NCBI RefSeq assembly: GCF_035594765.1
Contig: NC_085847.1
Span: 5,828,001 to 5,892,000, forward strand
Direction: 5' to 3'
DNA from: Anolis carolinensis
Taxonomy: Eukaryota
Length of the DNA: 64,000 bases
Part shown: positions 2,253 to 18,916 of the stretch, in pieces
Layout: each line of letters opens with the position of its first letter
How positions within the stretch are numbered: the stretch's first letter is position 1
Translations under genes and position numbers: made by a program
Notes under the pieces: model-generated
What the model saw: the letters and a program-made list of their open reading frames with translations, nothing else
What the model was told of the DNA's origin: nothing
The model's database searches: none

Positions 2253-3282
2253 GGATGGCCGGGAGCCCACGGACTGTCTGCCTTCCCCAGGGCATTACCG
2301 TATGATTGTATTTTGGGGCGGGGGGTGAGGGTCTGGCCCTCGCCCCTTGTCTTTGGCAGGGAAGAGAACAATGTGAAATTCAACGTGCAATAAAGGAAAA
2401 CAACCACTTTCCACGGGGCCAGGACAATCTTCCTTCAGGTGGAAACAATGCCATCGGCCTCCGCTTGGGTCCGGAAACCCAAAAGGGAGGCAGAACTGGC
2501 TCTTAGTCTCAACATAAACACTTTGGTTTTATTTCTAAACTGGTTTTCGAAATAAAATAGTGTATATATGTTTATCCTTGCCTGTCTTTCTCCTTTCTCC
2601 AGCTCTGGGAATGTCTGCGTCACCACAACAGGCCAATCTGCTTGCTCATTTTCCTTCCCTCCTTGGCGGAGAAGGGAGAAAGCAGAGGGGCAGCAGTCCT
2701 GTGGAGATATTCCGAGGGAGGCCCTCTCAAAGCTGGGGAAGGGGGAATGTACGCCCTCTCAGAGGTGAAAGGAACAGGCCTTTTCAGAGCTGGAGGAGGG
2801 AGAAAGAAAGTGGGTAGGCACCAGACCCATAGAAACATTGTGTAATGGAGAAAAGAGAAAGTGGGCTCAGAACTGGAGAGGGGAGAAAGTAGACCCTCTT
2901 AGAGCTGGAGAACGTAAGCAGGCAGGGGTCCCAGAAACACATGATGTGGGCCCTCTCAGAGCTGGAGATGGGAGAAAGTAGGCCCCTGGGAGCTGGAGAA
3001 AGGAGAAAGTAGGTAGGCAGTGGCCCCAATGACATATGGCAACGCTGCGTAGATACACTGGTATCGATAGATAGGGAGACCCGGGACTGTGCTAGAATGG
3101 GAGGGGGTTCTCAAGAGCATCCAGTCTGACCCCTTTCGATAGGCAAAGCATGGGTTGGTCAAAGAGGACCCAGAGGCGGAGACATTTGGGAAATGGCCGT
3201 GGGCCTTTTTATTGACACTTCTGGGATGCAGTCCTCCTCCTCCTCAGGTGTCCTTTTTGGGGCTGTTGTTCTGGAGCTTGCA

Positions 3283-5512
3283 CTAGTTGAGGGGGGACTC
3301 CTGCTCGATCTCCTCTCTGATGGCCAGGGCCCCGGCCAGCGTCTGCAGCTCCATGTGCTCGGCCCGGTCCCCACTCAGCAGCCAGTATTTCCTGCTGTGG
3401 CGCAGGTGGTGGAAGAGGGCCAGGCCCAGGGCCACGAGGGTGCCCAGCACGCAGCTGCCCACAAAGACCGCGCTCACCACCAGCAGCTTCTTCACCGTCT
3501 GGCCGTGCCCTGGGGGGGGGAGGGGGGGCACACAGAGGCAGCAAAAGCTATCAGCACACGCCAGCGCTTGCACCATGTCATCCCCCTCCTCCTCCAATGA
3601 GGAGGAGCCCCACTGGTGTCCAAGGGGGAGGACAGGCCACCTACCTTCCAACCAGGGCAGCCCTTCCTTCCTTAGGCGCAGAGGACCCAGGGCCACCCAG
3701 TGGAGCTGCCCTTTGCCCACAAAGCCTGCAAGGAAAGAGAGCAAGAGGGCGGTTGGGGGGGCTGGCGGAGGGCGGTTGGGGGGGCTGGCGGAGGGCGCCA
3801 GGCCTTCCCGGGAGGGTTGGGCTGAGCAGGAGGAGGCCAAGGCCGAGGCACCTTGGGGATGGTCAAGGGGACCGGGCTCCGAGGGGCAGACGCCATGGCA
3901 GCAGAGGCAGACCGAGGGACGAGAGGGCTCATCCACGTTCTTCCATCTAGGAGAGAAGAGCGTTTGGTAAGACAGAGCTGGGGAAGGGAGGAAGGAGGCC
4001 TCCTTCTCAAGGCTGGAGAAGGGAGAGAGAAAGCAGAACTCACAGGGCTGAGGTGACGTTGTAGGAGCAGGTCTTCTTCCCAGGACTGGCTGGGCTCTTC
4101 TGACTCCAGGCCGCAAGTAAACAATGAACATGGATCTGGCGGAAGAAACCCCAACACACACCACTTTGGCATCTCGGCTTAGCAAAACGAGGGGTGTCTG
4201 GGGAGCTGCGGCCCATTGGGAGGGACACCTGCCCGCCTCGTGCCTACCTCGGGGGTTTTGTCATCCAGCCAGAAAGCGCGGGTCTGCATGGTCAGCACCA
4301 CGGCCGGGTCCTCTTGACGGAACCAGGCCGCCTTCAAGTTGCCGGGGTAGAGGCACCTGCGGGGCAAAACCAGGGGTCACTTCACCCCAGAAATGGTTCC
4401 AAAGTGGAAAGGACATCCATCCGAGCAGCAGAAAGGAGTCCCAATGGGAAGGACATCCTCCAGGAGAGTCCAGTTTTGTCCAAAGGATGAATGGATAACC
4501 TTGGGATTGGTCAGACGTATACTGATAGATACCAACTAGACTGTTGGGACTGCTGCCTTCCCCCTTCCCCAGCTCTGAGGAGGCCTCCTTTCTCCTGCTA
4601 CAAGAAGACTTCCTGCTTTTTCCCTTCTCTAGCTCTGAGAAAGGCCTACTTTCTCCTTTCCATAGCTCTGAGGTCCACTTTCTCCCTTCTCCAGCTCCAA
4701 GATATCTATGAATGTCCCCTTTCTCCAGCTCGGAGGCCTGCTTTCTCCCTGCCCCAGCTCTGAGGGTGGCCTCCCAGTGCCGCCCAGCTCACCCATGGTT
4801 GTCCACAATGAAGAAGAGTGCCCGGGACTGGCTCTGTTGTGGGTTGTCCAGCACGTAGCATCTGTCTATGAACAGTTTCGGGAAGAACCCGGCTTCTGCC
4901 TGGAGGGAGGCCTGGATCCGGATGGCTTCGCCTTGGAGGTAAGCGCCGGGTTCCACCGAGACACTGAGGTCCTCTGCGGGAATAATCATAATAATAATAA
5001 TAACAACAACAACAACAAGTACCACCTCCCAGCAGCAAAGAACTGGTGAGATCACAAACCTGCAAAACTATTGGAAAATGAGCACACAAAGATACTGTGG
5101 GAACTGACAAAGTTATGGAACACAACACACCAGACATCACAGTGGTGGAAAAGAAAAAGGTTTGGATCATTGATGTCGCCATCCCAGGTGACAGTCGCAT
5201 TGACGAAAAACAACAGGAAAAACTCAGCCGCTCTCAGGACCTCAAGACTGAACTTCAAAGACTCTGGCAGAAACCAGTGCAGGTGGTCCCGGTGGTGATG
5301 AGCACACTGGGTGCTGTGCCAAAAGATCTTAGCCGGCATTTGGAAACAATAGACATTGACAAAATTATGATCTGCCAACTGCAAAAGGCCACCCTGCTGG
5401 GATCTGCGTGCATATCCGAAAATACATCACACAGTCCTAGACACTTGGGAAGTGTTCGACTTGTGATTTTGTGATACGAAATCCAGCATGTCTATCTTGT
5501 TTGCTGTCATAC

Positions 5513-5573
<61 letters not shown>

Positions 5574-5658
5574 CACACAGTCCTAGACACTTGGAAAGTG
5601 TTCGACTTGTGATTTTGTGATACGAAATCCAGCATATCTATCTTGTTTGCTGTCATAC

Positions 5659-5696
<38 letters not shown>

Positions 5697-5783
5697 ATCA
5701 CACAGTCCTAGACACTTGGGAAGTGTTCGACTTGTGATTTTGTGATACGAAATCCAGCATGTCTATCTTGTTTGCTGTCATAC

Positions 5784-5841
<58 letters not shown>

Positions 5842-5928
5842 CACACAGTCCTAGACACTTGGAAAGTGTTCGACTTGTGATTTTGTGATACGAAATCCAG
5901 CATATCTATCTTGTTTGCTGTGTCATAC

Positions 5929-5966
<38 letters not shown>

Positions 5967-7162
5967 ATCACACAGTCCTAGACACTTGGAAAGTGTTCGA
6001 CTTGTGATTTTGTGATACGAAATCCAGCATATCTATCTTGTTTGCTGTGTCATACAATAAAATAATAATAATATTAAATTGATTTGTATCCCGCCCAATC
6101 TCCCAGTGAGCAAACCTTCAATGCCTAGATAGAATGAAAACCAGAAAGGAGAGAGTTGGGTGTCATCTGCATATCTGAGATACCGAACTCCAAGACTCCG
6201 GGTGCGAGGTCTGCATGAAGCCCAAGAGACTCACCGTTGAGGAGCTGGAGAGAGAAGTTCAGCTCCGGCCCCATTTTGACGCGGGTAGCACAGACATGGG
6301 CCTGGGTTGGAGATGGTGTCGTCGTCGTCGCCGCTGCCACCGCCGGGGCCTTGGGTGCCGCCACTTGGGTGGCATTGGCAGAACCGCTCCACACCAGATG
6401 TATGGCCGCTGGTGAACAGAGGGAGAACAGAGGGGTCACAATGGAAATCTTGAACAGGACAGGTCCCCAGAAAGCGGGGAAGGAGCCCATCTCACCGTGA
6501 AACATCTTTCTGAAGAAGCCCGTCTTCCCCTTGGCAACATCCACGGGGAGAGTCAAGGAATCATCTTCAGCCAAAACTTGGGCAACTGGAAAGACACAAC
6601 AGGGATTGGCATGGCTGGGAAAGGCTTTGGCCCATGGGTCAGACTAGAGGGCCTTTGGGGGTCCCTTCCAACTTCTAAACAGTTCTCTGGGGCAGCCCTT
6701 AGATACCCACTTGGCACCACTCTTATTATTATTATTATTAATAATAATAATTATTATTAAATATAAAATATAAATAAATATAATCATACTATAATTATAT
6801 CATATAATGTAATACAATATATATTTACACTTTTCTTGGCACCATTCTTATTATTAGAAGGAGTAAATATAACAATATCAATAAATATAATCATACTATA
6901 ATTATATCATATAATGTAATTCAATATATATTTACACTTTTCTTGGCACCATTCTTATTATTAGGAAAAGTAAATATAACAATATCAATAAATATAATCA
7001 TACTATAATTATATCATATAATGTAATTCAATATGTATTTACAGTTTTCTTGGCACCATTATTATTATTAGGAGGAGTAAATATAACAATATCAATAAAT
7101 ATAGTCATACTATAATTATATCATATAATACAATATATATGTATTTACACTTTTCTTGGCAC

Positions 7163-7200
<38 letters not shown>

Positions 7201-7312
7201 GGAAAAGTAAATATAACAATATCAATAAATATAATCATACTATAATTATATCATATAATATAATACAATACATATATTTACAGTTTTCTTGGCACCATTA
7301 TTATTATCATCA

Positions 7313-7351
<39 letters not shown>

Positions 7352-7385
7352 GGAGGGTAAATATAACAATATCAATAAATATAAT

Positions 7386-7445
<60 letters not shown>

Positions 7446-8061
7446 ATCTCAGTGGCAACCCTTAAGATACCAATTTGGTACCCTTGTTATTGGTAGTAGT
7501 AGTAACAGTAGCAAATATAACAATATAACTAAACATAACCATACTATAATACTCTAATGCAATAATAATACAGTATATAATTATATAATATATAATATTA
7601 GATAGCCACTTTCCATTATAATTAATTATTATTATTATTATTTACAATAACAATGTAATAATATGATACTATATCAGTATATAATATACTATACACACAC
7701 ACACACAATTCTCTGTGACACCCCTTGGCATTATTATTATTATTAGTAGTAGTATTCAATATTAGAGAATAATAATATAAAACAATATCATGTACCACTT
7801 AAAATCTATTCATCTTGTATTTAATTCTATCTATGCTACTTTTCTCTTAAAAGAAATACAATTCAAAAAGCAGTCCAAGACAACATGAAAGCTGCCTTAA
7901 AATGAATTCCATTGTGGACCCCAAGAAAGTCCTCAATGGAAGGGCTTTGGTCCAACGTCAAGTGGTGGGGAGTTCCACAGCGTTCGAAAGGCAGATACAA
8001 AGGCAGACTTACGCAGGACGAAGGCCCAAAGGGCCACGAGGTCTCTCCGGCCACAAGCCAT
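3283..8061 (-). CDS. ZP3-like gene B: signal peptide + Ala/Thr linker + stand-alone ZP-C domain + TM helix (about 365 aa, 9 exons)
   Basis: Exons 8061-8013, 6585-6496, 6408-6235, 4973-4793, 4356-4248, 4135-4044, 3946-3852, 3725-3645 and 3509-3283. All are GT-AG and sum to 1098 nt with no internal stop. Signal peptide MACGRRDLVALWAFVLLAQVLA. ZP-C motifs LNFSLQLLNED, KLFIDRCY, FIVDNHGC, IHVHC, KTCSY and ZP3-type CLCCHGVC. EHP-like VALGPLRL. TM LLVVSAVFVGSCVLGTLVALGLALF. AATAAA (- strand) at 3213-3208. Confidence 0.88.
5018..6072 (+). mobile_element. R4/Dong-type 3' fragment followed by four more tandem copies of its 3'-terminal ~90 bp, separated by (TAA)n
   Basis: 5018-5512 is near-identical to 9165-9660. 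The unit CACACAGTCCTAGACACTTGG...GCTGTCATAC recurs at about 5572, 5695, 5839 and 5964. Confidence 0.9.
6710..7445. repeat. AT-rich ~105-140-bp minisatellite (about 6 copies) ending in (TA)n(TG)n, intron 1 of ZP gene B
   Basis: Unit TTTTCTTGGCACCATT(ATT)n...AAATATAACAATATCAATAAATATAATCATACTATAATTATATC. Confidence 0.92.
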
Positions 8062-8242: not shown

Positions 8243-9662
8243 TATCAGCATGGAGTTTGGTTTGGACAAATGTTGGACAGTGGCATTGAAGAAGGGAAAA
8301 ATCATTGAAAGTGAGGGCATCAATATGCCCAATGGCCAAACAATAAAGTGTCACCAGCCAGAGGCCTATAAATATCTGGGCATATTACAACATCAAGCAT
8401 GAACATGTGAAAACCGTGGTCAGCAAAGAATACACACAAAGGGTCAGAAAAATTCTCAAAAGCAAGCTCAATGGAGGCAACACCATCAAGGCCATAAACA
8501 CCTGGGCCATACCTGTCATAAGATATACTGCTGGCATCATAAACTGGACACAGGCGGAACTGGACAATTTGGACAGAAAAACAAGAAAACTCATGACCAT
8601 TCATCATTCCCTGCACCCCCGCAGTGATGTTGACCGGCTATATCTGCCTCGAAGATCAGGGGGCAGAGGACTCTTACAAGTAAAGCAAGCAGTCAAAGAA
8701 GAAGAACATGCCCTGGCAGAAGATGTCAAGCAAAGTGAAGAACCTGCTTTGATTGAAGTCAAAAATCAGAAACTCCTCAAAGCACAGCAGACAAAAAACC
8801 AGTACAAGAAAACCGCACTGCAAACTAGAGCTGACAGCTGGCACAAGAAAACATTGCATGGAAAGTTCCTTGACAAAATGGAAGGAAAAGCTGATAAGGA
8901 GAAGACCTGGTTATGGCTCACAAATGGGACCCTGAAGAAGGAGACAGAAGGCCTGATCCTTGCAGCCCAGGAGCAAGCCATCAGAACAAAGGCAATTCAG
9001 GCCAAGATTGAAAAATCAGCTGATGACCCAAAATGCAGACTGTGCAAGGAAACCGACGAAACCATGGATCATATCCTCAGCTGTTGTAAGAAAATCGCAC
9101 AGACAGACTACAAACAGAGGCACAACTATGTGGCCCAAATGATCCATTGGAACTTATGCCTCAAGTCCCACCTCCCAGCAGCAAAGAACTGGTGGGATCA
9201 CAAACCTGCAAAAGTATTGGAAAATGAGCACGCAAAGATACTGTGGGACTTCCGAATCCAGACTGACAAAGTTCTGGAACACAACACACCAGACATCACA
9301 GTTGTGGAAAAGAAAAAGGTTTGGATCATTGAAGTCGCCATCCCAGGTGACAGTCACATTGACGAAAAACAAGAGGAAAAACTCAGCCGCTCTCAGGACC
9401 TCAAGATTGAACTTCAAAGACTCTGGCAGAAACCAGTGCAGGTGATGGGCACACTGGGTGCCGTGCCAAAAGATCTCAGCCGGCATTTGGAAACAATAGA
9501 CATTGACAAAATTACGATCTGCCAACTGTAAAAGGCCACCCTGCTGGGATCTGCGTGCATCATCCGAAAATACATCCCACAGTCCTAGACACTTGGGAAG
9601 TGTTTGACTTGTGATTTTGTGATATGAAATCCAGCATGTCTATCTTGTTTGCTGTGTCATAA
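8243..9662 (+). mobile_element. 5'-truncated R4/Dong(Rex6)-type non-LTR retrotransposon, inactive
   Basis: RT C-terminus (YKYLG, GGRGL), CCHC knuckle (CRLCKETDETMDHILSCC) and REL endonuclease (RHN, PDITVV...IIEVAIP). Premature TAA at 9529-9531. TAA-rich flanks. Confidence 0.88.
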
Positions 9663-10786
9663 AATAAAATAATAATGAAATAATAATGAAATAATAAATA
9701 ATCAAATAAGATGACTACTCATACCCAAATAATAACTAACAAGGAAGTAACAACCATCCAAGAAGGCTGCTACTAATAATCAAATAATAACAACAACTAG
9801 CAATGAAATAGTAAATAATCAAAGAAGATTGCTACTAATAGATAAACATAATCAAACAATAATAACAAAAAATTAAAGAATAATGTATCGTCAAATAAGA
9901 CTGGTACTGCCATTACTATTATGTACTCCTACTAATGGATAATCAAATAGTAATAATAATAACATAAATATGGCTACTATTACTAACACTGCTAGTGATA
10001 AAGTTTCCAAACAATGCATATGGAAATCAATTCATTCACATATATGTGTGTGTTATATCTAGTTGTTAATAAATAAATAATAAATAAAAATAAATGTGAG
10101 ACTCCATAACCTTGTAATGTACTTAGAGAAGGAAGTCATGGAACTCTGGGATTTGTAGTTTGAGGAGATGCTGGCCCTAGCTCACCAAACTGCAAATCCC
10201 ATGAGTGTAAATGGCCTCAGAACGTTATCCCTGGGGCAACATAAAGGCCGTTGGAATAATTTTAAAAAATATTTCCTGGCCCCCTTGTGGGATATATAGT
10301 TCTGCAAGGGACTTAGACCTGGATGTTTAGGGGCTTTCCAGTTTCAAGAACCTTTGGGGGAGATTCCATCCCAGAGATGTCCCTTGAAAACCCTTCCGAC
10401 AGAGAGAGGCTTTGTAGGGCCAGCTAAACTACAAATCCCAGGGTTTGATGAGCATTGATATGAGTCATAAGTGTATGTATCATAAGGCTTTGGGAATGTT
10501 ATTAATCATAGTATTGCTATTTATACCCAGCTTTCCTCTCTTCAACAAGGCTCAACTGTGGAGTACAACTCCCAGAACCCCCGTTTCGAGCCAATCCACG
10601 GACAATGAAGTCACATACACAAACAGTCATGTTTCAGGGCTTTATTATGAGGATTTTGGGGGACATTCCCCTTGGCTTGGATAGTCCGTGGCCGTTGCTT
10701 CTCCAGTTGCCCAGGCCTTGTTTTGTAGAAGCAGGAGCCCAATAAGAGGAGGGGTGAAGTGGCCATTTCCCCGACGGACGGCGGCA

Positions 10787-13700
10787 TCACACCTGAAAAA
10801 AAGAGGAAGAAGTGTGGGAAGAAGAACACCGTCACCAGATGCTCACTTTCCAATAGCTGGCTAGAGAAAGTCAAGTAGAGGATGGGTGAAGATGTAGTTT
10901 GCTCTAGATTACAGTCAAGAGGATCATCAATAGGATCATGAGGAACATCTAGAGAGACCCGATTGACCAAAGCTGGTCTACGTGATGGCCATGAGGAATA
11001 TATTATCCAAGGTTGGTCTGCATTGTGGCCACGAGGGACATCTAAAGGAACCATAACAACCAAGGTTGATCTACATTGTGGACCTGAGGAACATAGAGGG
11101 ACCATAATTCCAGGTTGGTCTACATTATGGAGCTGAGGCAAAGTCTCACCTGGCCTTTGGGTCTCCTCCGGAGGGCAAAGGAGCTGTTGGCAACCCACTC
11201 GTAATGCCCGGCGTTCGGAGACCGTCTCCGAACGGTCACTTGGCCCACCCCCATCTCGGATGCCAACCTTGGAGAACCTGAAGCAGGATGAGAAGGGAGA
11301 ACTTGGAGGCCGGATGGAGAGGGGAGAAAGGGCCCCGACTCGGCCTTGAACGGGCACCGCACCTTTGAGGCCCCGCTTGTGCCGAAAGCTGGGCGGTTGG
11401 CACACTGAGTCACAGCATTGGCAGAAGGGACTGTTGAGATCATCCAAGAGTTCCCACCTAAGAAGAAAGGAAGAAGGTCCACCTGGAGGTCGTCTTCTCT
11501 GCACTTGGAGGGCATCCATGTTATCCAGCAATAGCACTCGAATCCCTCTTTAATGGCCCAGCTCTATTTTATGGGATGCTGGGATTTGTAGTTTGGTGCC
11601 CCCATTAGAGAAGAGCTGTCAGTTCAGGGCAGCGAACCAGAGCAATGGTGCTCCACCTTGGGTTCTCCAGATGTCTCATACTACTTTGGACTTTAGCAAG
11701 CAAGAGATAATTCTACGTACACCCCAAACTACAAAACCCATGGCAGCCAAGGTTATGGAAATGTGGACTCAGGGTCAAAGGAGCATTACCGCTTGAGGTC
11801 CCGATGAAAGGAACACGCTTTCCTGGTGGGGTGAGCGAGGATGTTGGGGTCCCAGGCTGAAATCCGGCAATGGAGGTAGACCTGGAAAAGGGGAAGTCCA
11901 CATTCCCCATCAGCTCCAAGGCCCCAGGCATCCCTCTTCCATACAATGGTCAGTAGAGACCCTCTTGACCTTCCTCAGGTCTACGCCATGGCTGTGAGGA
12001 ACATCTGGAGAACCTCCCGTTGTCCCCAGACCACACAAGGCTAGGCTCTAAGGGGCTTTGATGTCTTCCGTCCATGTACTTACATCATTGTGAAGGCCAA
12101 GAAATTCAAAGGCTTGCAAAGAGAGGCGGAGGGTTCCAGGGGTTCTTCTTGGGAGAAACTGTGAATCGGCCCCCTTGCCGTCCACAAAGCACCTGCCCCG
12201 AGACAAAAGAAGGCGCCTTTGAGTGGCTGAATGAGGAAGGAAGCTGAATTCGCCACAGAAGGGGAAAGGAATCCAAAGCATATCTTGAGATGGACCCTTG
12301 GATGCCTCCTCCAAAGTTCAGGCTAAACCCCGGAGTGGATTCACAGCTCTGCCAGCCAGGACAGATGCCCCTAAGTGTCCACTCACCCATAGTTGGCAAT
12401 AACGGTATAATTCCTGAGGGACCGGCTCAGTTCTGGAGATGTCGCTGCCACACATTCGTCAACAAAGACCCTCAAGGGCTGGTGGAAGGAGGCCTTCACC
12501 CCAAACTCCAGGTGGATCTGTGAGCCTAGGAGGAAGGCTGCCGAGGCGGAGGGGGCACGGAAGTCCTCTGTGGAAGGAACCGGTGCCAGGGACTTAGGAT
12601 GGGCATTGCCAGCTCCTGTCCCTCAAGGAGCTTTCCCTTACCTTTCATGAACGTTGCCGTGAACACCAGCCCACCGGATGCCAAGAGCTGGCCCTTCACC
12701 GATGTCACCTGTGCTGGAACCCATGGCTCGGACCTAGAAGGCACAAAAGGGGAAGGCACAAAAGGGGGAGACCCAAGGAGGTGTACCCAAGGACACCCCT
12801 TCCCAACATCCCCATGAAACCCCCTTGAAAGAGCCTGGCAACATTGGGCACAAGGACCCAAGGCTTACCCGTAACGGGTGCAGTTGATCCGCTCTGTGAA
12901 CGGGCGGTTATAGAGTCCGCTCTGGCTGTACAGGGGGCTGTGGACCAGGTAGGCGGAGTACTCCACCATCTTGACAGACCTCTGCAAGAACCCAAAATAA
13001 TGTCCTCAAGATGCCCAAGGAACCCTCCGTGGTTTGAGAGTTCGCCTACAGCGCCCATTGCCGTAATCGCACACAACCCAACACACACCCTCCCCAAGGT
13101 TGGGGATGTTCCTCATGGCCATGATTTAGACCAAACTTGATCAGTAGAGTCCCTCTTGACGTCCCTCTGGTCTACATCATGCCCACAAGGAAGATCTGGA
13201 GGATCACACCGACCAAGGTTGGGCTACTTATGACTATGAGGACCATCTACAGGGACCACATTGACCAAGGTTGGTCTACATGATGGCCACGAGGAACAAA
13301 GGGACCATATTGACCAAGGGTGGGCTACATTCAGGACAAGGAACATCTAGATGGACCATATTAACCAAGGCAGAGCTATAGCATGGCCATAAGGAAGCTC
13401 TGGAGATCTCCAGGCCATGCATAGCCCACCGAAGCAAGCCCCTCCCCATTCGCCCACTGGGTCTGAGGGCCCAAGGTGGGCTCCCCTCCCATCGCCAGGC
13501 CTTTGGCCACTCACTCACCAGCCGAGCAAAGCCACACTCAGTCAGGCGGTACTCAAAGTGGAAGAGGCGCTGCTGGGCGTTGGCGGAGGACGGGGGACAG
13601 GTGCCCAGGCGCAGGTCCTGGGGGTCCAGCTCCATCCCGGTGCCCCATGGGTCCATTGGAAGCACAAGGTGGACGCTGGTCTGGTTGCACTCATACAGCA

Positions 13701-13899
13701 CCGAGGTGGAGGGCACTACGGGAAGGAGGGAGGGGAGATGATAGCAGCTGTAGTCCAAGGCAGCCCCTTCCCCAGCCTTGAGGCAATGGTTTTGGGGAGC
13801 TTTGAGGAGGCCAATGCCTGTCCCCTTCTTACCTCTCTGAGCCACAGCGAGCGCCAGGCTGCAGGCCAGGCCCACCAGGCCCATCACACCAGACTCCAT
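10787..13899 (-). CDS. ZP3-like gene A: signal peptide + ZP-N + ZP-C + furin site + EHP, no TM (about 359 aa, 10 exons)
   Basis: Exons 13899-13833, 13715-13519, 12981-12869, 12733-12642, 12567-12387, 12192-12084, 11881-11790, 11457-11363, 11277-11150 and 10792-10787 (GTG TGA), 1080 nt in frame. ZP-N Cys in YECN, GTCP, TECG and INCT. ZP-C motifs FLLGSQIHLE, PLRVFVDECVA, VIANYGCFVDG, VYLHC, KACSF and CQCCDSVC. Furin site RHKR. EHP-like MGVGQVTV. AATAAA (- strand) at 10646-10641. Confidence 0.9.
10930..11130. repeat. Degenerate ~50-bp tandem repeat in ZP gene A introns (also about 11950-12010 and 13140-13410)
   Basis: CCAAGGTTGGTCTACAT..TGGCCAC.AGG.ACATCTA.AGGGACCAT recurs. Confidence 0.75.
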
Positions 13900-16840: not shown

Positions 16841-18916
16841 CTACCACTTGAGGAAATCCCGCACTCGGCTCCAGAGCTTGGTGATCCACAGGTTGACTCC
16901 TAAGTCCGTCAGGTACTGGATCTCGGGGGTCAGCATCTTGCGGCACAGCTTGCGGTGCTTCTTGTGGATGCGCTTCTTGAGGTTGTAGCCCAGGATGGAC
17001 TTCTCGCCCAGGGGCTGCCAGGGCTGCATGGCGGACTCCTGGATGGCGTTGGCGTCCACGGGGCGGCCCCCGTCGATGCAAATGCGGGTCATCTTCTCGT
17101 TCTCCTCCTGGAGGCGGGCCACGTCCTCGGCCATGCGCTCCCTCCCGTAGGCCTCCACCTTGCGCCAGAACGTGGCGTTGAAGTGCCGGTAGAGCTTGGC
17201 GTCAATGAGGTTCCAGGCGGTGGCCTTCTGGTAGAGCTCGCCCGTCAAGCGGGAGACGGTGGAGTCCTTCCGGGCGTTGAGCTTGAAGTAGAGGACGTCC
17301 TCCAGCTCCCAGCAGAGCAAGTCCTTGAGGAGCACCAGGGACTCGTCAAAGTACTCCAGGAGCATGACCAAGTGGAAGCGCTGGTCGATCTCTTGGATGG
17401 ACTGCTCCACCCGGGGGCTGCTGGGGTTCAGGGTGTTGTCGTAGCCCAGGTCAAAGAAGAGCAGGTTCTGCAGGTAGTGGGCGTTGAAGCCGTTGGGGTC
17501 GTAGTAGCGCCAGGGGTCCCGCAGGAACTCGGCCAGCTTGTCCTCCCCGGAGAGCTTCCAGGTCAAGGGAATGATGCGCCCAAAGTAGTGGAAGGAGGAC
17601 TCAAAGAGGTACGCCGGGTCCCGCAGCACCGTCACAAAGGTGGCGCCGGCCGGCAGCAGCTTGCGCACCTCCTCGTACTGGAAGCGCATGTGGTTGCAGA
17701 TGATGTTGAAGCACATGCCCGGGCGGTAGTCCCGCACCTGGCTGCGCTCAAAGAAGGACGGGTAGTAGAAGTCGTTGCGGCCGTTGGGGAAGGCAAACTT
17801 GAGGCGGTGCTTCTCCCCAAAGCGGAAGAGGATGTTGAGGATGGTGCTGCTGGCTGTCTTGTGGGTCTTCATGAACATGATGTCCCGCTTGGGGAGGCAC
17901 CTGCGGCCCGAGAGGCTGCGGCTGGCGTTGGAGGAGGAGGGCAGGCGGGCCGGGGCACGGAGGGAAGAGCAAGCCGAGGGGATGGGCGTCCTGGAAAAGA
18001 AAGGCCAAAGGTCAAGGCCTGCCCCTCGCATCCACCCTCAAGAATGCTCCGGCTCCTTTCCCAAAACTATGCCTTCTAAGCATTGAATGCTCACATGTGG
18101 GACTCTAGGACTATCCTGTGGTCAAATTAGACAACTGTCAGGTGAAAATAGACGAGTTGAAGTGCAATGACACCCATCTCCTAGTAAGGAGGTGTAGGAT
18201 TTCCCTAGTTCTCCAACCCAGCACTCTTCACAGAGGGAACTGCAGGGACTGCAAGGGGCATCTAGTCTAACCCTCCTACTCTTTGAGGAACTGCATTGAG
18301 GAGGCCCTTACTGTCTGAAGAACCATGTCCCACTACCAGCCGCCCACGTTTTGCAGATGGGCTTGCAGTGAGCAGAGCCGGTCCAACAATGAGGTGAATT
18401 AAGCGGTCGCTTCGAGCGCAAAACATACAGGAGCGCAGTCAAGACTGCTTTTTCTGTTGATTTGTTGTAAAACATGATGTTTTGGTGCTTAATCTGTAAA
18501 ATCTTAATGTAATTTGATGTTTAATAGACTTTTCCTTAATCCCTCCTTATTATCCAACATTTTTGCTTATCCAACGCTTTTATTTTTCAGTGATTGGTTT
18601 GGGGGGGGGGGTGCCAAAATTCTGTCCGCCTACACTTGAAAAATACCTAGGGCCAGCTTTGGCAGTGAGGCAGCTCACGCCGATCAGGGAGACCCTTCCC
18701 CGCTCCCGTCCTGTGGCAAGGATGCCCGAACTCCCCTTCCAAAGGGAAAGACCTCCCCTCCGCCCCCCAGGGCCAGCTCACTCACTCGGTCATGCTGACT
18801 TGCAAGGGCGAGATGGCGTAGGAGTAGAGCAGCAGCATGAAGCTGGTCAGGAGGGTGCCCAGCGCCAGGCCCTTGCCCATGGAGCGCCAGTTCTTCCCCT
18901 GCGGCAGCATGGCCAT
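16841..18916 (-). CDS. GAL3ST1: Galactose-3-O-sulfotransferase 1 (cerebroside sulfotransferase), about 426 aa
   Basis: Coding exons 18916-18786 (MAMLPQGKNWRSMGKGLALGTLLTSFMLLLYSY, type II anchor) and 17990-16841 (PAPS motif FMKTHKTASSTILNILFRFG, TVLRDP, C-terminus LCRKMLTPEIQYL...DFLKW). Syntenic with PES1. Confidence 0.97.
18445..18580. mobile_element. Internal fragment of the same Tigger-like MITE family
   Basis: AACATGATGTTTTGGTGCTTAAT...TTCCTTAATCCCTCCTTATTATCCAA is shared with 960-1050. Confidence 0.7.

What the first reader, a model, noticed from the sequence alone, without database searches (positions are those of the whole stretch)
3283..8061. Vertebrate stand-alone ZP-C domain membrane protein
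Seen: between the signal peptide and the IHP-like strand (LNFSLQLLN) there are only about 75 residues, largely Ala/Thr/Pro-rich (AAPKAPAVAAATTTTPSPT) with a single Cys. A ZP-N domain needs about 100 aa and four Cys. Intron 2 is 87 nt and intron 1 is AT-rich minisatellite, so there is no room for hidden ZP-N exons. All eight ZP3-type ZP-C/subdomain Cys are kept (DRCY, GCLY, VHCL, KTCS, CLCCHGVC) and the frame is intact over nine exons. Established: isolated ZP-N proteins are known (PLAC1, OOSP family), whereas isolated ZP-C is exceptional; I know of it mainly from nematodes. Inference: a functional ZP-C-only receptor-like protein.
Basis: partly seen in the sequence, partly recalled or inferred. 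Interest (0 to 1): 0.85.

Follow-up and report, generated by a model that had tools for sequence, protein, structure and literature searches.

The report
Lizard membrane protein with lone ZP-C
This Anolis gene encodes a membrane-anchored protein that keeps only the second half (ZP-C) of the egg-coat "zona pellucida" module. It belongs to a conserved family, not found described in the papers searched, in amphibians, reptiles, birds and some mammals; the only lone ZP-C proteins those papers report are in nematodes.

Summary
A nine-exon, minus-strand gene (window 8061-3283, 365 codons, all GT-AG) encodes these parts in order:
- a signal peptide;
- a cysteine-poor Ala/Thr/Pro linker of about 73 residues;
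- an IHP-like strand;
- a ZP3-type ZP-C with all eight Cys;
- an EHP strand, a TM helix and a cytoplasmic tail.

The organism is Anolis carolinensis. The RefSeq model "zona pellucida sperm-binding protein 3" (322 aa) equals exons 2(end)-9.

There is no ZP-N:
- Pfam finds only PF00100.
- ZP-N-bearing ZP3 proteins hit only the upstream paralogue (gene A).
- AlphaFold2 leaves the N-terminus disordered.
- Complete orthologues in 12 or more tetrapods (newt, squamates, turtles, crocodile, birds, platypus, opossum, tenrec, sloth) have the same build.

These orthologues form one clade (SH-aLRT 99). All lack the furin site, and nearly all share a juxtamembrane Cys and a long conserved tail.

Most likely this is a surface-retained, non-polymerising ZP-C binding module. 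That function is inferred, not shown.

The Anolis copy evolves about three times faster than its relatives, with a branch dN/dS near 0.3. It has lost the juxtamembrane Cys, and a Tyr-to-TAG change removed the last 12 tail residues.

No RNA evidence could be obtained. The papers searched report stand-alone ZP-C only in nematodes. The scan had flagged this same stretch before (s1-528317).

The parts
8013..8061 (-). Exon 1: ATG plus the n- and h-regions of the signal peptide; phase-1 donor CGTAAGT
   Evidence: The junction phase and position match exon 1 of the Hemicordylus RefSeq model. Similarity to the crocodile signal peptide is weak (z 3.5; 2 of 500 shuffles reach the score).
6586..8012 (-). 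Intron 1: AT-rich, with a 107-130 bp minisatellite at 6758-7351.
6496..6585 (-). Exon 2: end of the signal peptide (QVLA/EDD) and the conserved GFFRK motif
   Evidence: Homologous to exon 2 of Hemicordylus and Paroedura (z 7.1 and 5.2; 0 of 500 shuffles reach the score).
6409..6495 (-). Intron 2, 87 nt
6235..6408 (-). Exon 3: Ala/Thr/Pro-rich linker with one Cys and an NAT sequon, then the IHP-like strand LNFSLQLLN
   Evidence: In the AF2 model, residues 1-28 and 32-48 of P0001 have pLDDT below 50, and there is a strand at 54-60.
4974..6234 (-). Intron 3: a retroelement fragment (plus-strand ORF 5097-5474) and a 125-146 bp minisatellite at 5421-6077
4793..4973 (-). Exon 4: ZP-C strands, Cys5 (DRCY)
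   Evidence: PF00100 matches residues 53-181 of P0001.
4248..4356 (-). Exon 5: ZP-C, Cys6 (GCLY)
4044..4135 (-). Exon 6: ZP-C, Cys7 (VHCL) and Cys8 (KTCS)
   Evidence: 35% identical to the corresponding exon of gene A at 11881-11804.
3852..3946 (-). Exon 7: ZP3-specific subdomain with Cys9-12 (CLCC..GVC). No furin site follows.
3645..3725 (-). Exon 8: external hydrophobic patch strand (HWVALGPLRL)
   Evidence: AF2 strand 227-239; the 10-residue block 231-240 has mean pLDDT 93.
3283..3509 (-). Exon 9: juxtamembrane segment (the family's conserved Cys is Gly here), TM helix, cytoplasmic tail, and a TAG stop at 3285-3283
3244..3282 (-). Vestigial tail codons after the TAG, followed by a second stop. 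They are still alignable to the CKLKSD..PEK end of the orthologues, so the TAG sits where the orthologues have the conserved Tyr.
   Evidence: compared.

Best explanation
The gene is a genuine member of a conserved tetrapod family derived from the ZP3 lineage. The family lost the ZP-N half of the ZP module and kept a complete ZP3-type ZP-C.

Domain order: signal peptide; disordered Ser/Thr/Pro/Ala-rich stalk; IHP strand carrying a conserved N-glycosylation sequon; ZP-C with its four disulfides; EHP strand; TM helix; cytoplasmic tail of about 45-65 residues.

How it most likely works:
- Polymerising ZP proteins have a furin site between the CxCC motif and the EHP. This family has a conserved EFPGEG-type segment there instead.
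- Without that cleavage the EHP should stay bound as the last strand of ZP-C. The protein should then remain on the membrane in the closed, precursor-like state. With no ZP-N either, it should be unable to polymerise head-to-tail.
- It would therefore act as a cell-surface binding module, in the manner of the non-polymerising ZP co-receptors betaglycan and endoglin. The conserved tail would supply trafficking or signalling contacts.

Shown here: exon structure, domain content, fold, family membership and family-wide conservation of these features.

Inferred: signal-peptide cleavage, glycosylation, surface retention, binding function and tissue of expression. The oocyte is a guess, based on ZP3 ancestry and the ZP3-like neighbour.

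In the Anolis lineage the protein is under weaker or changed constraint. Amino-acid change is about three times faster, the juxtamembrane Cys is lost, the TM has a 5-residue deletion, and a Tyr-to-stop change removes the last 12 residues together with the conserved Tyr of the YxxL motif.
For: Gene model and identity
- The model is identical to RefSeq P0001.

Domain content and fold
- Pfam finds only PF00100, at residues 53-181, E 7.9e-8.
- phmmer against the PDB aligns residues 51-209 to the ZP-C part (130-290) of chicken ZP3 3NK3, E 3.9e-11. Nothing aligns to its ZP-N.
- AF2 model of P0001: the block of residues 51-60 already has mean pLDDT 93, with high-confidence strands out to residue 192 and the blocks to 210 at 78-95. 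An EHP strand lies at 227-239, a long helix at 244-293 includes the TM segment, and residues 1-28 and 32-48 have pLDDT below 50.
- The best Foldseek hit is 3NK4, rmsd 2.2 A over 166 columns. ZP2 and betaglycan ZP-C domains follow.
- The full-length Hemicordylus orthologue also shows no folded N-terminal domain.

Family
- The family is one clade with SH-aLRT 99, and its branching broadly follows the species tree.
- 12 of 12 members lack RX[KR]R between the CxCC motif and the TM, and all have a TM followed by a long tail. 9 of 14 ZP-N-bearing relatives have such a site, mostly about 10 residues after the CxCC motif.
- The gene order A, B, MTFP1, with a SEC14L-type gene beyond where the locus reaches, is kept in Anolis, Phrynocephalus and Hemicordylus; the Phrynosoma locus shows A, B and a SEC14L-type gene with no MTFP1 call.

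Selection
- Pairwise dN/dS is 0.21-0.34. Anolis branch: dN 0.22, dS 0.64. Phrynosoma branch: dN 0.07, dS 0.54.
- Tajima relative-rate tests count 45 vs 15 and 63 vs 9 unique changes.
Against: - There is no RNA evidence. Exon 1 and expression therefore rest on homology and gene models.
- The Anolis copy shows signs of loosened constraint: the nonsense codon in the tail, the lost Cys, the DRCYV motif in place of DECYG and the long branch.
- dS is near saturation, so the dN/dS values are rough.
- Lack of an RX[KR]R motif does not exclude cleavage by another protease.
- Monotreme RefSeq models join gene A and gene B into one 720-aa product.
- No ligand, tissue or phenotype is known.
Confidence: 0.7

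Rival explanations
1. The Anolis copy is a decaying or recently inactivated gene. The family is real, but this member no longer works.
For: - Amino-acid evolution is three times faster than in Phrynosoma (Tajima chi2 15 and 40.5).
- The end branch is 0.67, against 0.32 for Phrynocephalus.
- A Tyr-to-TAG change removes the conserved tail end, while the downstream codons are still recognisable.
- The otherwise nearly invariant juxtamembrane Cys is lost, and the TM has a 5-residue deletion.
Against: - All nine exons are open with canonical splice sites.
- All eight ZP-C Cys, the IHP and the EHP are retained.
- Branch dN/dS is about 0.34, well below 1.
- The ectodomain still has an odd Cys count, because a new Cys sits in the linker.
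- The AF2 model is confident over the domain.
Confidence: 0.12
2. The protein is not retained on the membrane. A non-furin protease frees the ectodomain, which then joins egg-coat filaments as a terminator or cap, because it can accept but not donate a ZP-N contact.
For: - It descends from ZP3 and sits next to a ZP3-like gene.
- The IHP and EHP, the elements used in polymerisation control, are both conserved.
Against: - None of the 12 members has a dibasic or furin-type site between the CxCC motif and the TM.
- A long conserved cytoplasmic tail, which ordinary ZP3 proteins do not have, argues for a role while still membrane-bound.
Confidence: 0.1
3. Gene B is really the 3' half of one long A-B transcript, as in the monotreme RefSeq models. 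On this reading the ZP-C is not stand-alone.
For: - Platypus and echidna models of 705-722 aa join an A-type ZP-N/ZP-C to the B-type ZP-C and TM.
- Anolis gene A has only a weak hydrophobic segment where relatives have a TM.
Against: - In platypus, gene A's own TM exon (L005 18436-18555) and a B-specific first exon (L005 30796-30879) both lie between the joined parts. The fused model skips both.
- Complete B models with their own signal peptides exist in crocodile, duck, newt, opossum, sloth, Hemicordylus and Paroedura.
- Anolis B has an ATG and signal-peptide exon with the conserved junction phase.
Confidence: 0.05
4. ZP-N exons exist but were missed, either lost from the assembly inside the repeat-rich introns or lying further upstream.
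For: Introns 1 and 3 are repeat-rich.
Against: - There are no N runs near the gene.
- tblastn finds no ZP-N between 4974 and 10600.
- Intron 2 is only 87 nt.
- Orthologues from independent assemblies run from signal peptide to ZP-C without a ZP-N.
Confidence: 0.03

Closest known systems
ZP3 (ZPC) egg-coat proteins, e.g. chicken ZP3 (PDB 3NK3/3NK4)
   Same: - ZP-C with the ZP3-specific subdomain and the eight-Cys pattern, including CxCC.
- IHP and EHP strands and a C-terminal TM.
- Best sequence and fold match.
- Nested among ZP3-like sequences in the tree.
   Different: - No ZP-N.
- No furin site.
- A long conserved cytoplasmic tail and a juxtamembrane Cys.
- A mucin-like N-terminal stalk in place of ZP-N.
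Stand-alone ZP-C proteins of nematodes (T01D1.8, F46G11.6, CUTL-19; Weadick 2020, PMC7456536)
   Same: - The same architectural event: a ZP module reduced to ZP-C.
- The signal peptide is kept and R/K cleavage sites are mostly lost.
- Maintained over long evolutionary times.
   Different: - An independent origin is inferred, because this family sits within vertebrate ZP3-like proteins. The nematode proteins were not compared here.
- ZP3-type Cys pattern with the subdomain.
- Always has a TM and a long tail, whereas two of the nematode subfamilies are C-terminally truncated.
Betaglycan (TGFBR3) and endoglin, the non-polymerising ZP co-receptors
   Same: - Type I membrane proteins.
- Per the literature, they are non-polymerising co-receptors; the parallel in cleavage state and binding use is my own reading.
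- Betaglycan ZP-C domains are structural hits (3QW9, 8DC0, 4AJV).
   Different: - They keep a ZP-N and large orphan domains.
- Sequence identity is only 14-15%.
- No ligand is known for the present family.
Upstream paralogue in the same window (gene A, about 13899-10611, minus strand)
   Same: - ZP3-like ZP-C with CxCC, on the same strand.
- The tandem arrangement is conserved in four squamates and in platypus.
   Different: - Gene A has a ZP-N (13743-13510 and 12978-12646) and an RHKR furin site.
- It is only 35-40% identical to B in the two exons that could be matched.

Membership tests
ZP module proteins (ZP-N + ZP-C) | ZP-N domain (about 100 aa, four conserved Cys; Pfam PF23344) | tested here: not met
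   - No PF23344 hit in P0001 or in six complete orthologues, while ordinary ZP3 relatives hit it in the same search.
- 0-3 Cys before Cys5.
- No ZP-N-like exon by tblastn.
- The N-terminus is disordered in AF2.
ZP module proteins (ZP-N + ZP-C) | ZP-C domain (Pfam PF00100) | tested here: met
   PF00100 E 7.9e-8, 32.9 bits, above the 24.6 cut-off, covering profile positions 5-132 of 133. Foldseek matches ZP-C domains.
ZP module proteins (ZP-N + ZP-C) | Consensus furin cleavage site before the EHP, which licenses polymerisation | tested here: not met
   No RX[KR]R between the CxCC motif and the TM in 12 of 12 family members. 9 of 14 ZP-N-bearing relatives have one.
ZP3 subfamily | Eight-Cys ZP-C with the CxCC-containing subdomain; closest sequence and fold relatives are ZP3 proteins | tested here: met
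   - The eight Cys are at conserved columns.
- phmmer hits only the ZP3 chains 3NK3 and 8BQU.
- Foldseek's best hit is 3NK4.
- The clade is nested among ZP3-like sequences.
ZP3 subfamily | Component of the egg coat, expressed in oocyte or follicle | not testable with these tools
Stand-alone ZP-C proteins (architecture class, Weadick 2020) | Secreted or membrane protein whose only ZP element is ZP-C, conserved across species | tested here: met
   The class definition comes from PMC7456536. Common descent with the nematode proteins was not tested. An independent origin is inferred from the family's position among vertebrate ZP3-like sequences.
Non-polymerising ZP co-receptors (betaglycan/endoglin type) | Membrane-retained ZP protein that binds a soluble ligand through its ZP region | not tested
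   Only the architecture (TM, no furin site, tail) and a distant fold match are available. No ligand is known.

The most novel reading that the evidence does not exclude
Gene B and its conserved neighbour, gene A, work as a pair. The membrane-anchored lone ZP-C would hold or nucleate the ZP-N-bearing, furin-released neighbour (or other egg-coat ZP proteins) at the oocyte surface. It would act as an anchor, cap or assembly regulator of egg-coat filaments. This function would have been lost in boreoeutherian mammals along with the gene.
Probability: 0.1. Interest if true: 0.85.

Novelty: new variant of a known kind. Interest (0 to 1): 0.66.

Why it matters
Until 2020 the ZP field held that ZP-C never occurs without ZP-N. 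The only exceptions in the papers I could search are nematode proteins (PMC7456536; still cited as the only case in PMC9154058 in 2022).

This finding adds a ZP3-derived, membrane-anchored, furin-site-free ZP-C-only family. Among the hits it runs from newt through reptiles, birds, monotremes and marsupials to a sloth and a tenrec, and no boreoeutherian mammal was among the hits. If human and mouse indeed lack it, that would explain why it has been overlooked.

The family is a natural experiment on what ZP-C does by itself, and a candidate new player in egg-coat biology or surface signalling of egg-laying tetrapods. It is directly testable in species where genome editing is possible.

Tried and rejected
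- **RNA support.** Splice junctions therefore could not be seen.
- **Per-exon Pfam scans.** They were nearly blank; only exon 4 hit ZP-C, E 0.11. The exons are too short to score alone.
- **Joined spliced model.** I did not search with it. I searched exon by exon, with the stop-free ORF 3286-4185, and then with the database protein P0001, which equals exons 2(end)-9.
- **Recent partial tandem duplication of gene A.** Rejected. A and B are only 35-40% identical in the two exons that could be matched, and B is a separate clade present from the newt (amphibian) to mammals.
- **Complex prediction.** Platypus A ZP-N against B ZP-C gave no answer (score 0.00). This is evidence neither for nor against binding.
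- **A duck Logan contig** carrying the last exon turned out to be unspliced or genomic DNA, so it is no evidence of expression.
- **Short fish and other ZP-C-like hits** (P0107, P0126, P0041, P0046, P0049). P0107 and P0126 are fragments of ordinary ZP3 proteins that have full-length versions in their clusters. The fish models look like short or truncated ZP3-like predictions and do not carry the family's motifs. None was counted as a member of this family.
- **Literature.** Six searches found no paper on a vertebrate ZP-C-only protein or on the LOC/XP identifiers. Subscription journals are not covered.


Full report
**What is there**

The finding lies on the minus strand. Motif anchoring gave nine exons:
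- e1 8061-8013
- e2 6585-6496
- e3 6408-6235
- e4 4973-4793
- e5 4356-4248
- e6 4135-4044
- e7 3946-3852
- e8 3725-3645
- e9 3509-3283

All introns are GT-AG. The exons sum to 1098 nt, that is 365 codons plus TAG. Intron 2 is 87 nt. Intron 1 holds a 107-130 bp AT-rich minisatellite (6758-7351). Intron 3 holds a 125-146 bp minisatellite (5421-6077) and a retroelement fragment. The only N runs in the window are far away.

**How the spliced model was handled**

I searched exon by exon and with the stop-free ORF 3286-4185, which happens to hold exons 7, 8 and 9 in one frame.

That search returned P0001, a 322-aa RefSeq protein named 'zona pellucida sperm-binding protein 3 [Anolis carolinensis]'. 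All later protein work used P0001 or other stored proteins by reference.

**No ZP-N**

- Pfam on P0001 gives only PF00100 (ZP-C), residues 53-181, E 7.9e-8.
- phmmer against the PDB aligns residues 51-209 to residues 130-290 of chicken ZP3 (3NK3). Nothing aligns to its ZP-N.
- An AlphaFold2 model built on 46 aligned sequences (mean pLDDT 78) leaves residues 1-28 and 32-48 below pLDDT 50. From about residue 50 it folds a beta-sandwich, with strands out to 192 and block pLDDT of 78-95 out to 210. It has an EHP strand at 227-239 and a long helix at 244-293 that includes the TM segment.
- Foldseek's best match is 3NK4, rmsd 2.2 A over 166 columns. ZP2 and betaglycan ZP-C domains follow.
- tblastn with seven ZP-N-bearing ZP3-type proteins finds ZP-N only at 13743-13510 and 12978-12646. 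Those exons belong to the upstream paralogue, gene A. Nothing hits between 4974 and 10600.

**Exons 1 and 2**

- Exon 2 is homologous to exon 2 of the Hemicordylus and Paroedura RefSeq isoforms (QV.A... GFFR; z 7.1 and 5.2; 0 of 500 shuffles reach the score).
- Exon 1 is short, and its similarity is weak (z 3.5 to the crocodile signal peptide).
- Its phase-1 donor sits at the same position, one to two residues before the QV(L/W)A motif, as in the Hemicordylus gene.
- Signal-peptide cleavage after QVLA is my inference.
- On this model, about 73 residues separate the signal peptide from the IHP-like strand. They contain one Cys.

**A family, not an oddity**

An exhaustive phmmer search of 1.84 billion cluster representatives, two word-based searches and cluster look-ups gave proteins of the same build from:
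- squamates: Phrynocephalus, Phrynosoma, Hemicordylus, Paroedura and Gekko;
- Crocodylus;
- birds: Anas and Pogoniulus;
- three turtles;
- the newt Lissotriton;
- platypus and echidna;
- Monodelphis;
- two placentals, Echinops (tenrec) and Choloepus (sloth).

The sources name them only 'ZP3-like' or 'uncharacterized'. Complete models carry their own signal peptide and only PF00100.

A full-length AlphaFold2 model of the Hemicordylus protein again shows a helical signal peptide, about 75 disordered residues, ZP-C, an EHP strand and a TM-plus-tail helix.

On a ZP-C-only alignment the family is one clade (SH-aLRT 99). Its internal branching broadly follows the species tree. It is nested, without resolution, among ZP3-like proteins that include the gene A type, lungfish, coelacanth and Xenopus sequences.

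Gene order is conserved. Anolis, Phrynocephalus and Hemicordylus show A, B, MTFP1, with a SEC14L-type gene beyond where the locus reaches. Phrynosoma shows A, B and a SEC14L-type gene. Platypus has the same set of genes.

No fish member and no boreoeutherian member appeared among the hits. That is not proof of absence.

**Derived features shared by the family**

- 0-3 Cys before Cys5, mostly inside the signal peptide.
- A conserved N-glycosylation sequon inside the IHP strand (NFS or NFT).
- All eight ZP3-type Cys.
- No RX[KR]R between the CxCC motif and the TM in 12 of 12 members, with a conserved EFPGEG-like segment there instead. 9 of 14 ZP-N-bearing relatives have a furin site, mostly about 10 residues after the CxCC motif.
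- A Cys just outside the membrane (C[RH]T.KK).
- 68-92 residues from the start of the TM to the C-terminus, with conserved ELQ.VV.AL and, in many sauropsid members, YxxL-type motifs.

**Mechanism**

The following is inference from established ZP biology. Polymerisation needs ZP-N, and it needs release of the EHP by cleavage at the furin site. This family has neither.

The protein should therefore stay on the membrane with its ZP-C closed by its own EHP, and should be unable to polymerise head-to-tail. In architecture this is closest to the non-polymerising ZP co-receptors betaglycan and endoglin. It goes one step further, because the ZP-N is gone altogether.

The odd ectodomain Cys suggests an intermolecular disulfide. 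The long conserved tail suggests trafficking or signalling contacts. Ligand and tissue are unknown.

**The Anolis copy**

It is the most divergent squamate member: 41-44% identical to the others, while they are 47-70% identical to each other. Using exon-wise codon alignments from the fetched loci:

| Measure | Result |
|---|---|
| Pairwise dN/dS (dS about 0.85-1.4, near saturation) | 0.21-0.34 |
| Anolis branch | dN 0.22, dS 0.64 |
| Phrynosoma branch | dN 0.07, dS 0.54 |
| Tajima relative-rate test, outgroup Hemicordylus | 45 vs 15 unique changes (chi2 15) |
| Tajima relative-rate test, outgroup Phrynocephalus | 63 vs 9 unique changes (chi2 40.5) |

Other Anolis-specific changes:
- It lacks the juxtamembrane Cys (GHGQTVKK against GQCHTMKK) but has a Cys in the linker, so the odd ectodomain Cys count is kept.
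- It has a 5-residue deletion in the TM.
- Its stop codon is a TAG where relatives have the conserved Tyr. The next 12 codons still read like the orthologues' tail and end at a second stop.

I read this as weakened or shifted constraint rather than a dead gene. A recent loss of function cannot be excluded.

**The monotreme fusion models**

RefSeq joins A and B into proteins of 705-722 aa in platypus and echidna. On the platypus locus, gene A's own TM exon (L005 18436-18555) and a B-specific first exon used by an older 404-aa model (L005 30796-30879) both lie between the joined parts. The fusion is therefore most simply a read-through or chimeric model.

**Literature**

- Stand-alone ZP-C domains were first reported in 2020, in nematodes, as 'never before found in isolation' (PMC7456536).
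- A 2022 paper still cites only that case (PMC9154058).
- The vertebrate ZP gene survey of Feng et al. 2018 (PMC6262864) splits ZP3 into ZP3.1, ZP3.2 and ZP3.3. My term searches of it found no mention of domain architecture or transmembrane segments. I could not map gene B to their classes.
- Six searches found nothing on a vertebrate ZP-C-only protein.
- The library lacks most subscription journals, so this is absence in what could be searched.

**Limits**

- There is no expression evidence. No run is on record as RNA.
I worked beside those places and sent them to no search tool afterwards.
- A predicted complex of platypus A ZP-N with B ZP-C gave no answer.

**Verdict**

The gene is a member of a conserved tetrapod family of lone-ZP-C membrane proteins that I could not find described in the literature available to me. 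It is a new variant of the ZP3 and ZP-module kind, and its function remains to be found.

Noticed in passing
window 10611-13899 (-): Gene A is a ZP3-like paralogue with a signal peptide, a ZP-N (13743-13510 and 12978-12646), a ZP-C, CxCC and an RHKR furin site. The Elgaria orthologue (P0020) has a 22-residue TM. At that position Anolis reads only a short, interrupted hydrophobic stretch (VGEMATSPLLLLGSCFY), so the anchor may be weak or lost.
   Followed up: partly
window 8407-9531 (+) and 5097-5474 (+): A 374-aa retroelement ORF lies between genes A and B. A closely similar fragment of the same element lies inside intron 3 of gene B.
   Followed up: no
L005 6001-37451 (platypus): The RefSeq 720-aa model fuses the A-type and B-type genes. 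It skips gene A's own TM exon (18436-18555) and a B-specific first exon (30796-30879). Echidna has a matching 722-aa model.
   Followed up: partly
window 16841-18031 (-) and about 27395-29723 (-): There is a single-exon galactose-3-O-sulfotransferase-like ORF (396 aa) and pescadillo-like exons. With MTFP1 and a SEC14L-type gene beyond gene B, this resembles, from my own recall of the mammalian map, the GAL3ST1-PES1 / MTFP1-SEC14L neighbourhood of mammals, which (also from memory) holds no annotated ZP gene there.
   Followed up: no
proteins P0014 (Echinops) and P0175 (Choloepus): The only placental members found are a tenrec and a sloth. No boreoeutherian appeared among the hits, which suggests loss in that lineage. 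This was not tested at the DNA level.
   Followed up: partly
proteins P0041 and P0046 (Danio aesculapii, Brachyhypopomus): These are short fish ZP3-like models with little or no ZP-N and a shared C-terminal motif (CFWRGGRLGYRPSRDLL.KY). They could be truncated predictions or a separate reduced lineage.
   Followed up: no
window 6235-6261 (-), the IHP strand: The N-glycosylation sequon inside the IHP-like strand (NFS or NFT) is kept in most family members aligned: 11 of the 13 rows that cover the strand; the exceptions are the newt Lissotriton and Echinops. That is unusual for a strand that is buried in ordinary ZP-C domains.
   Followed up: no
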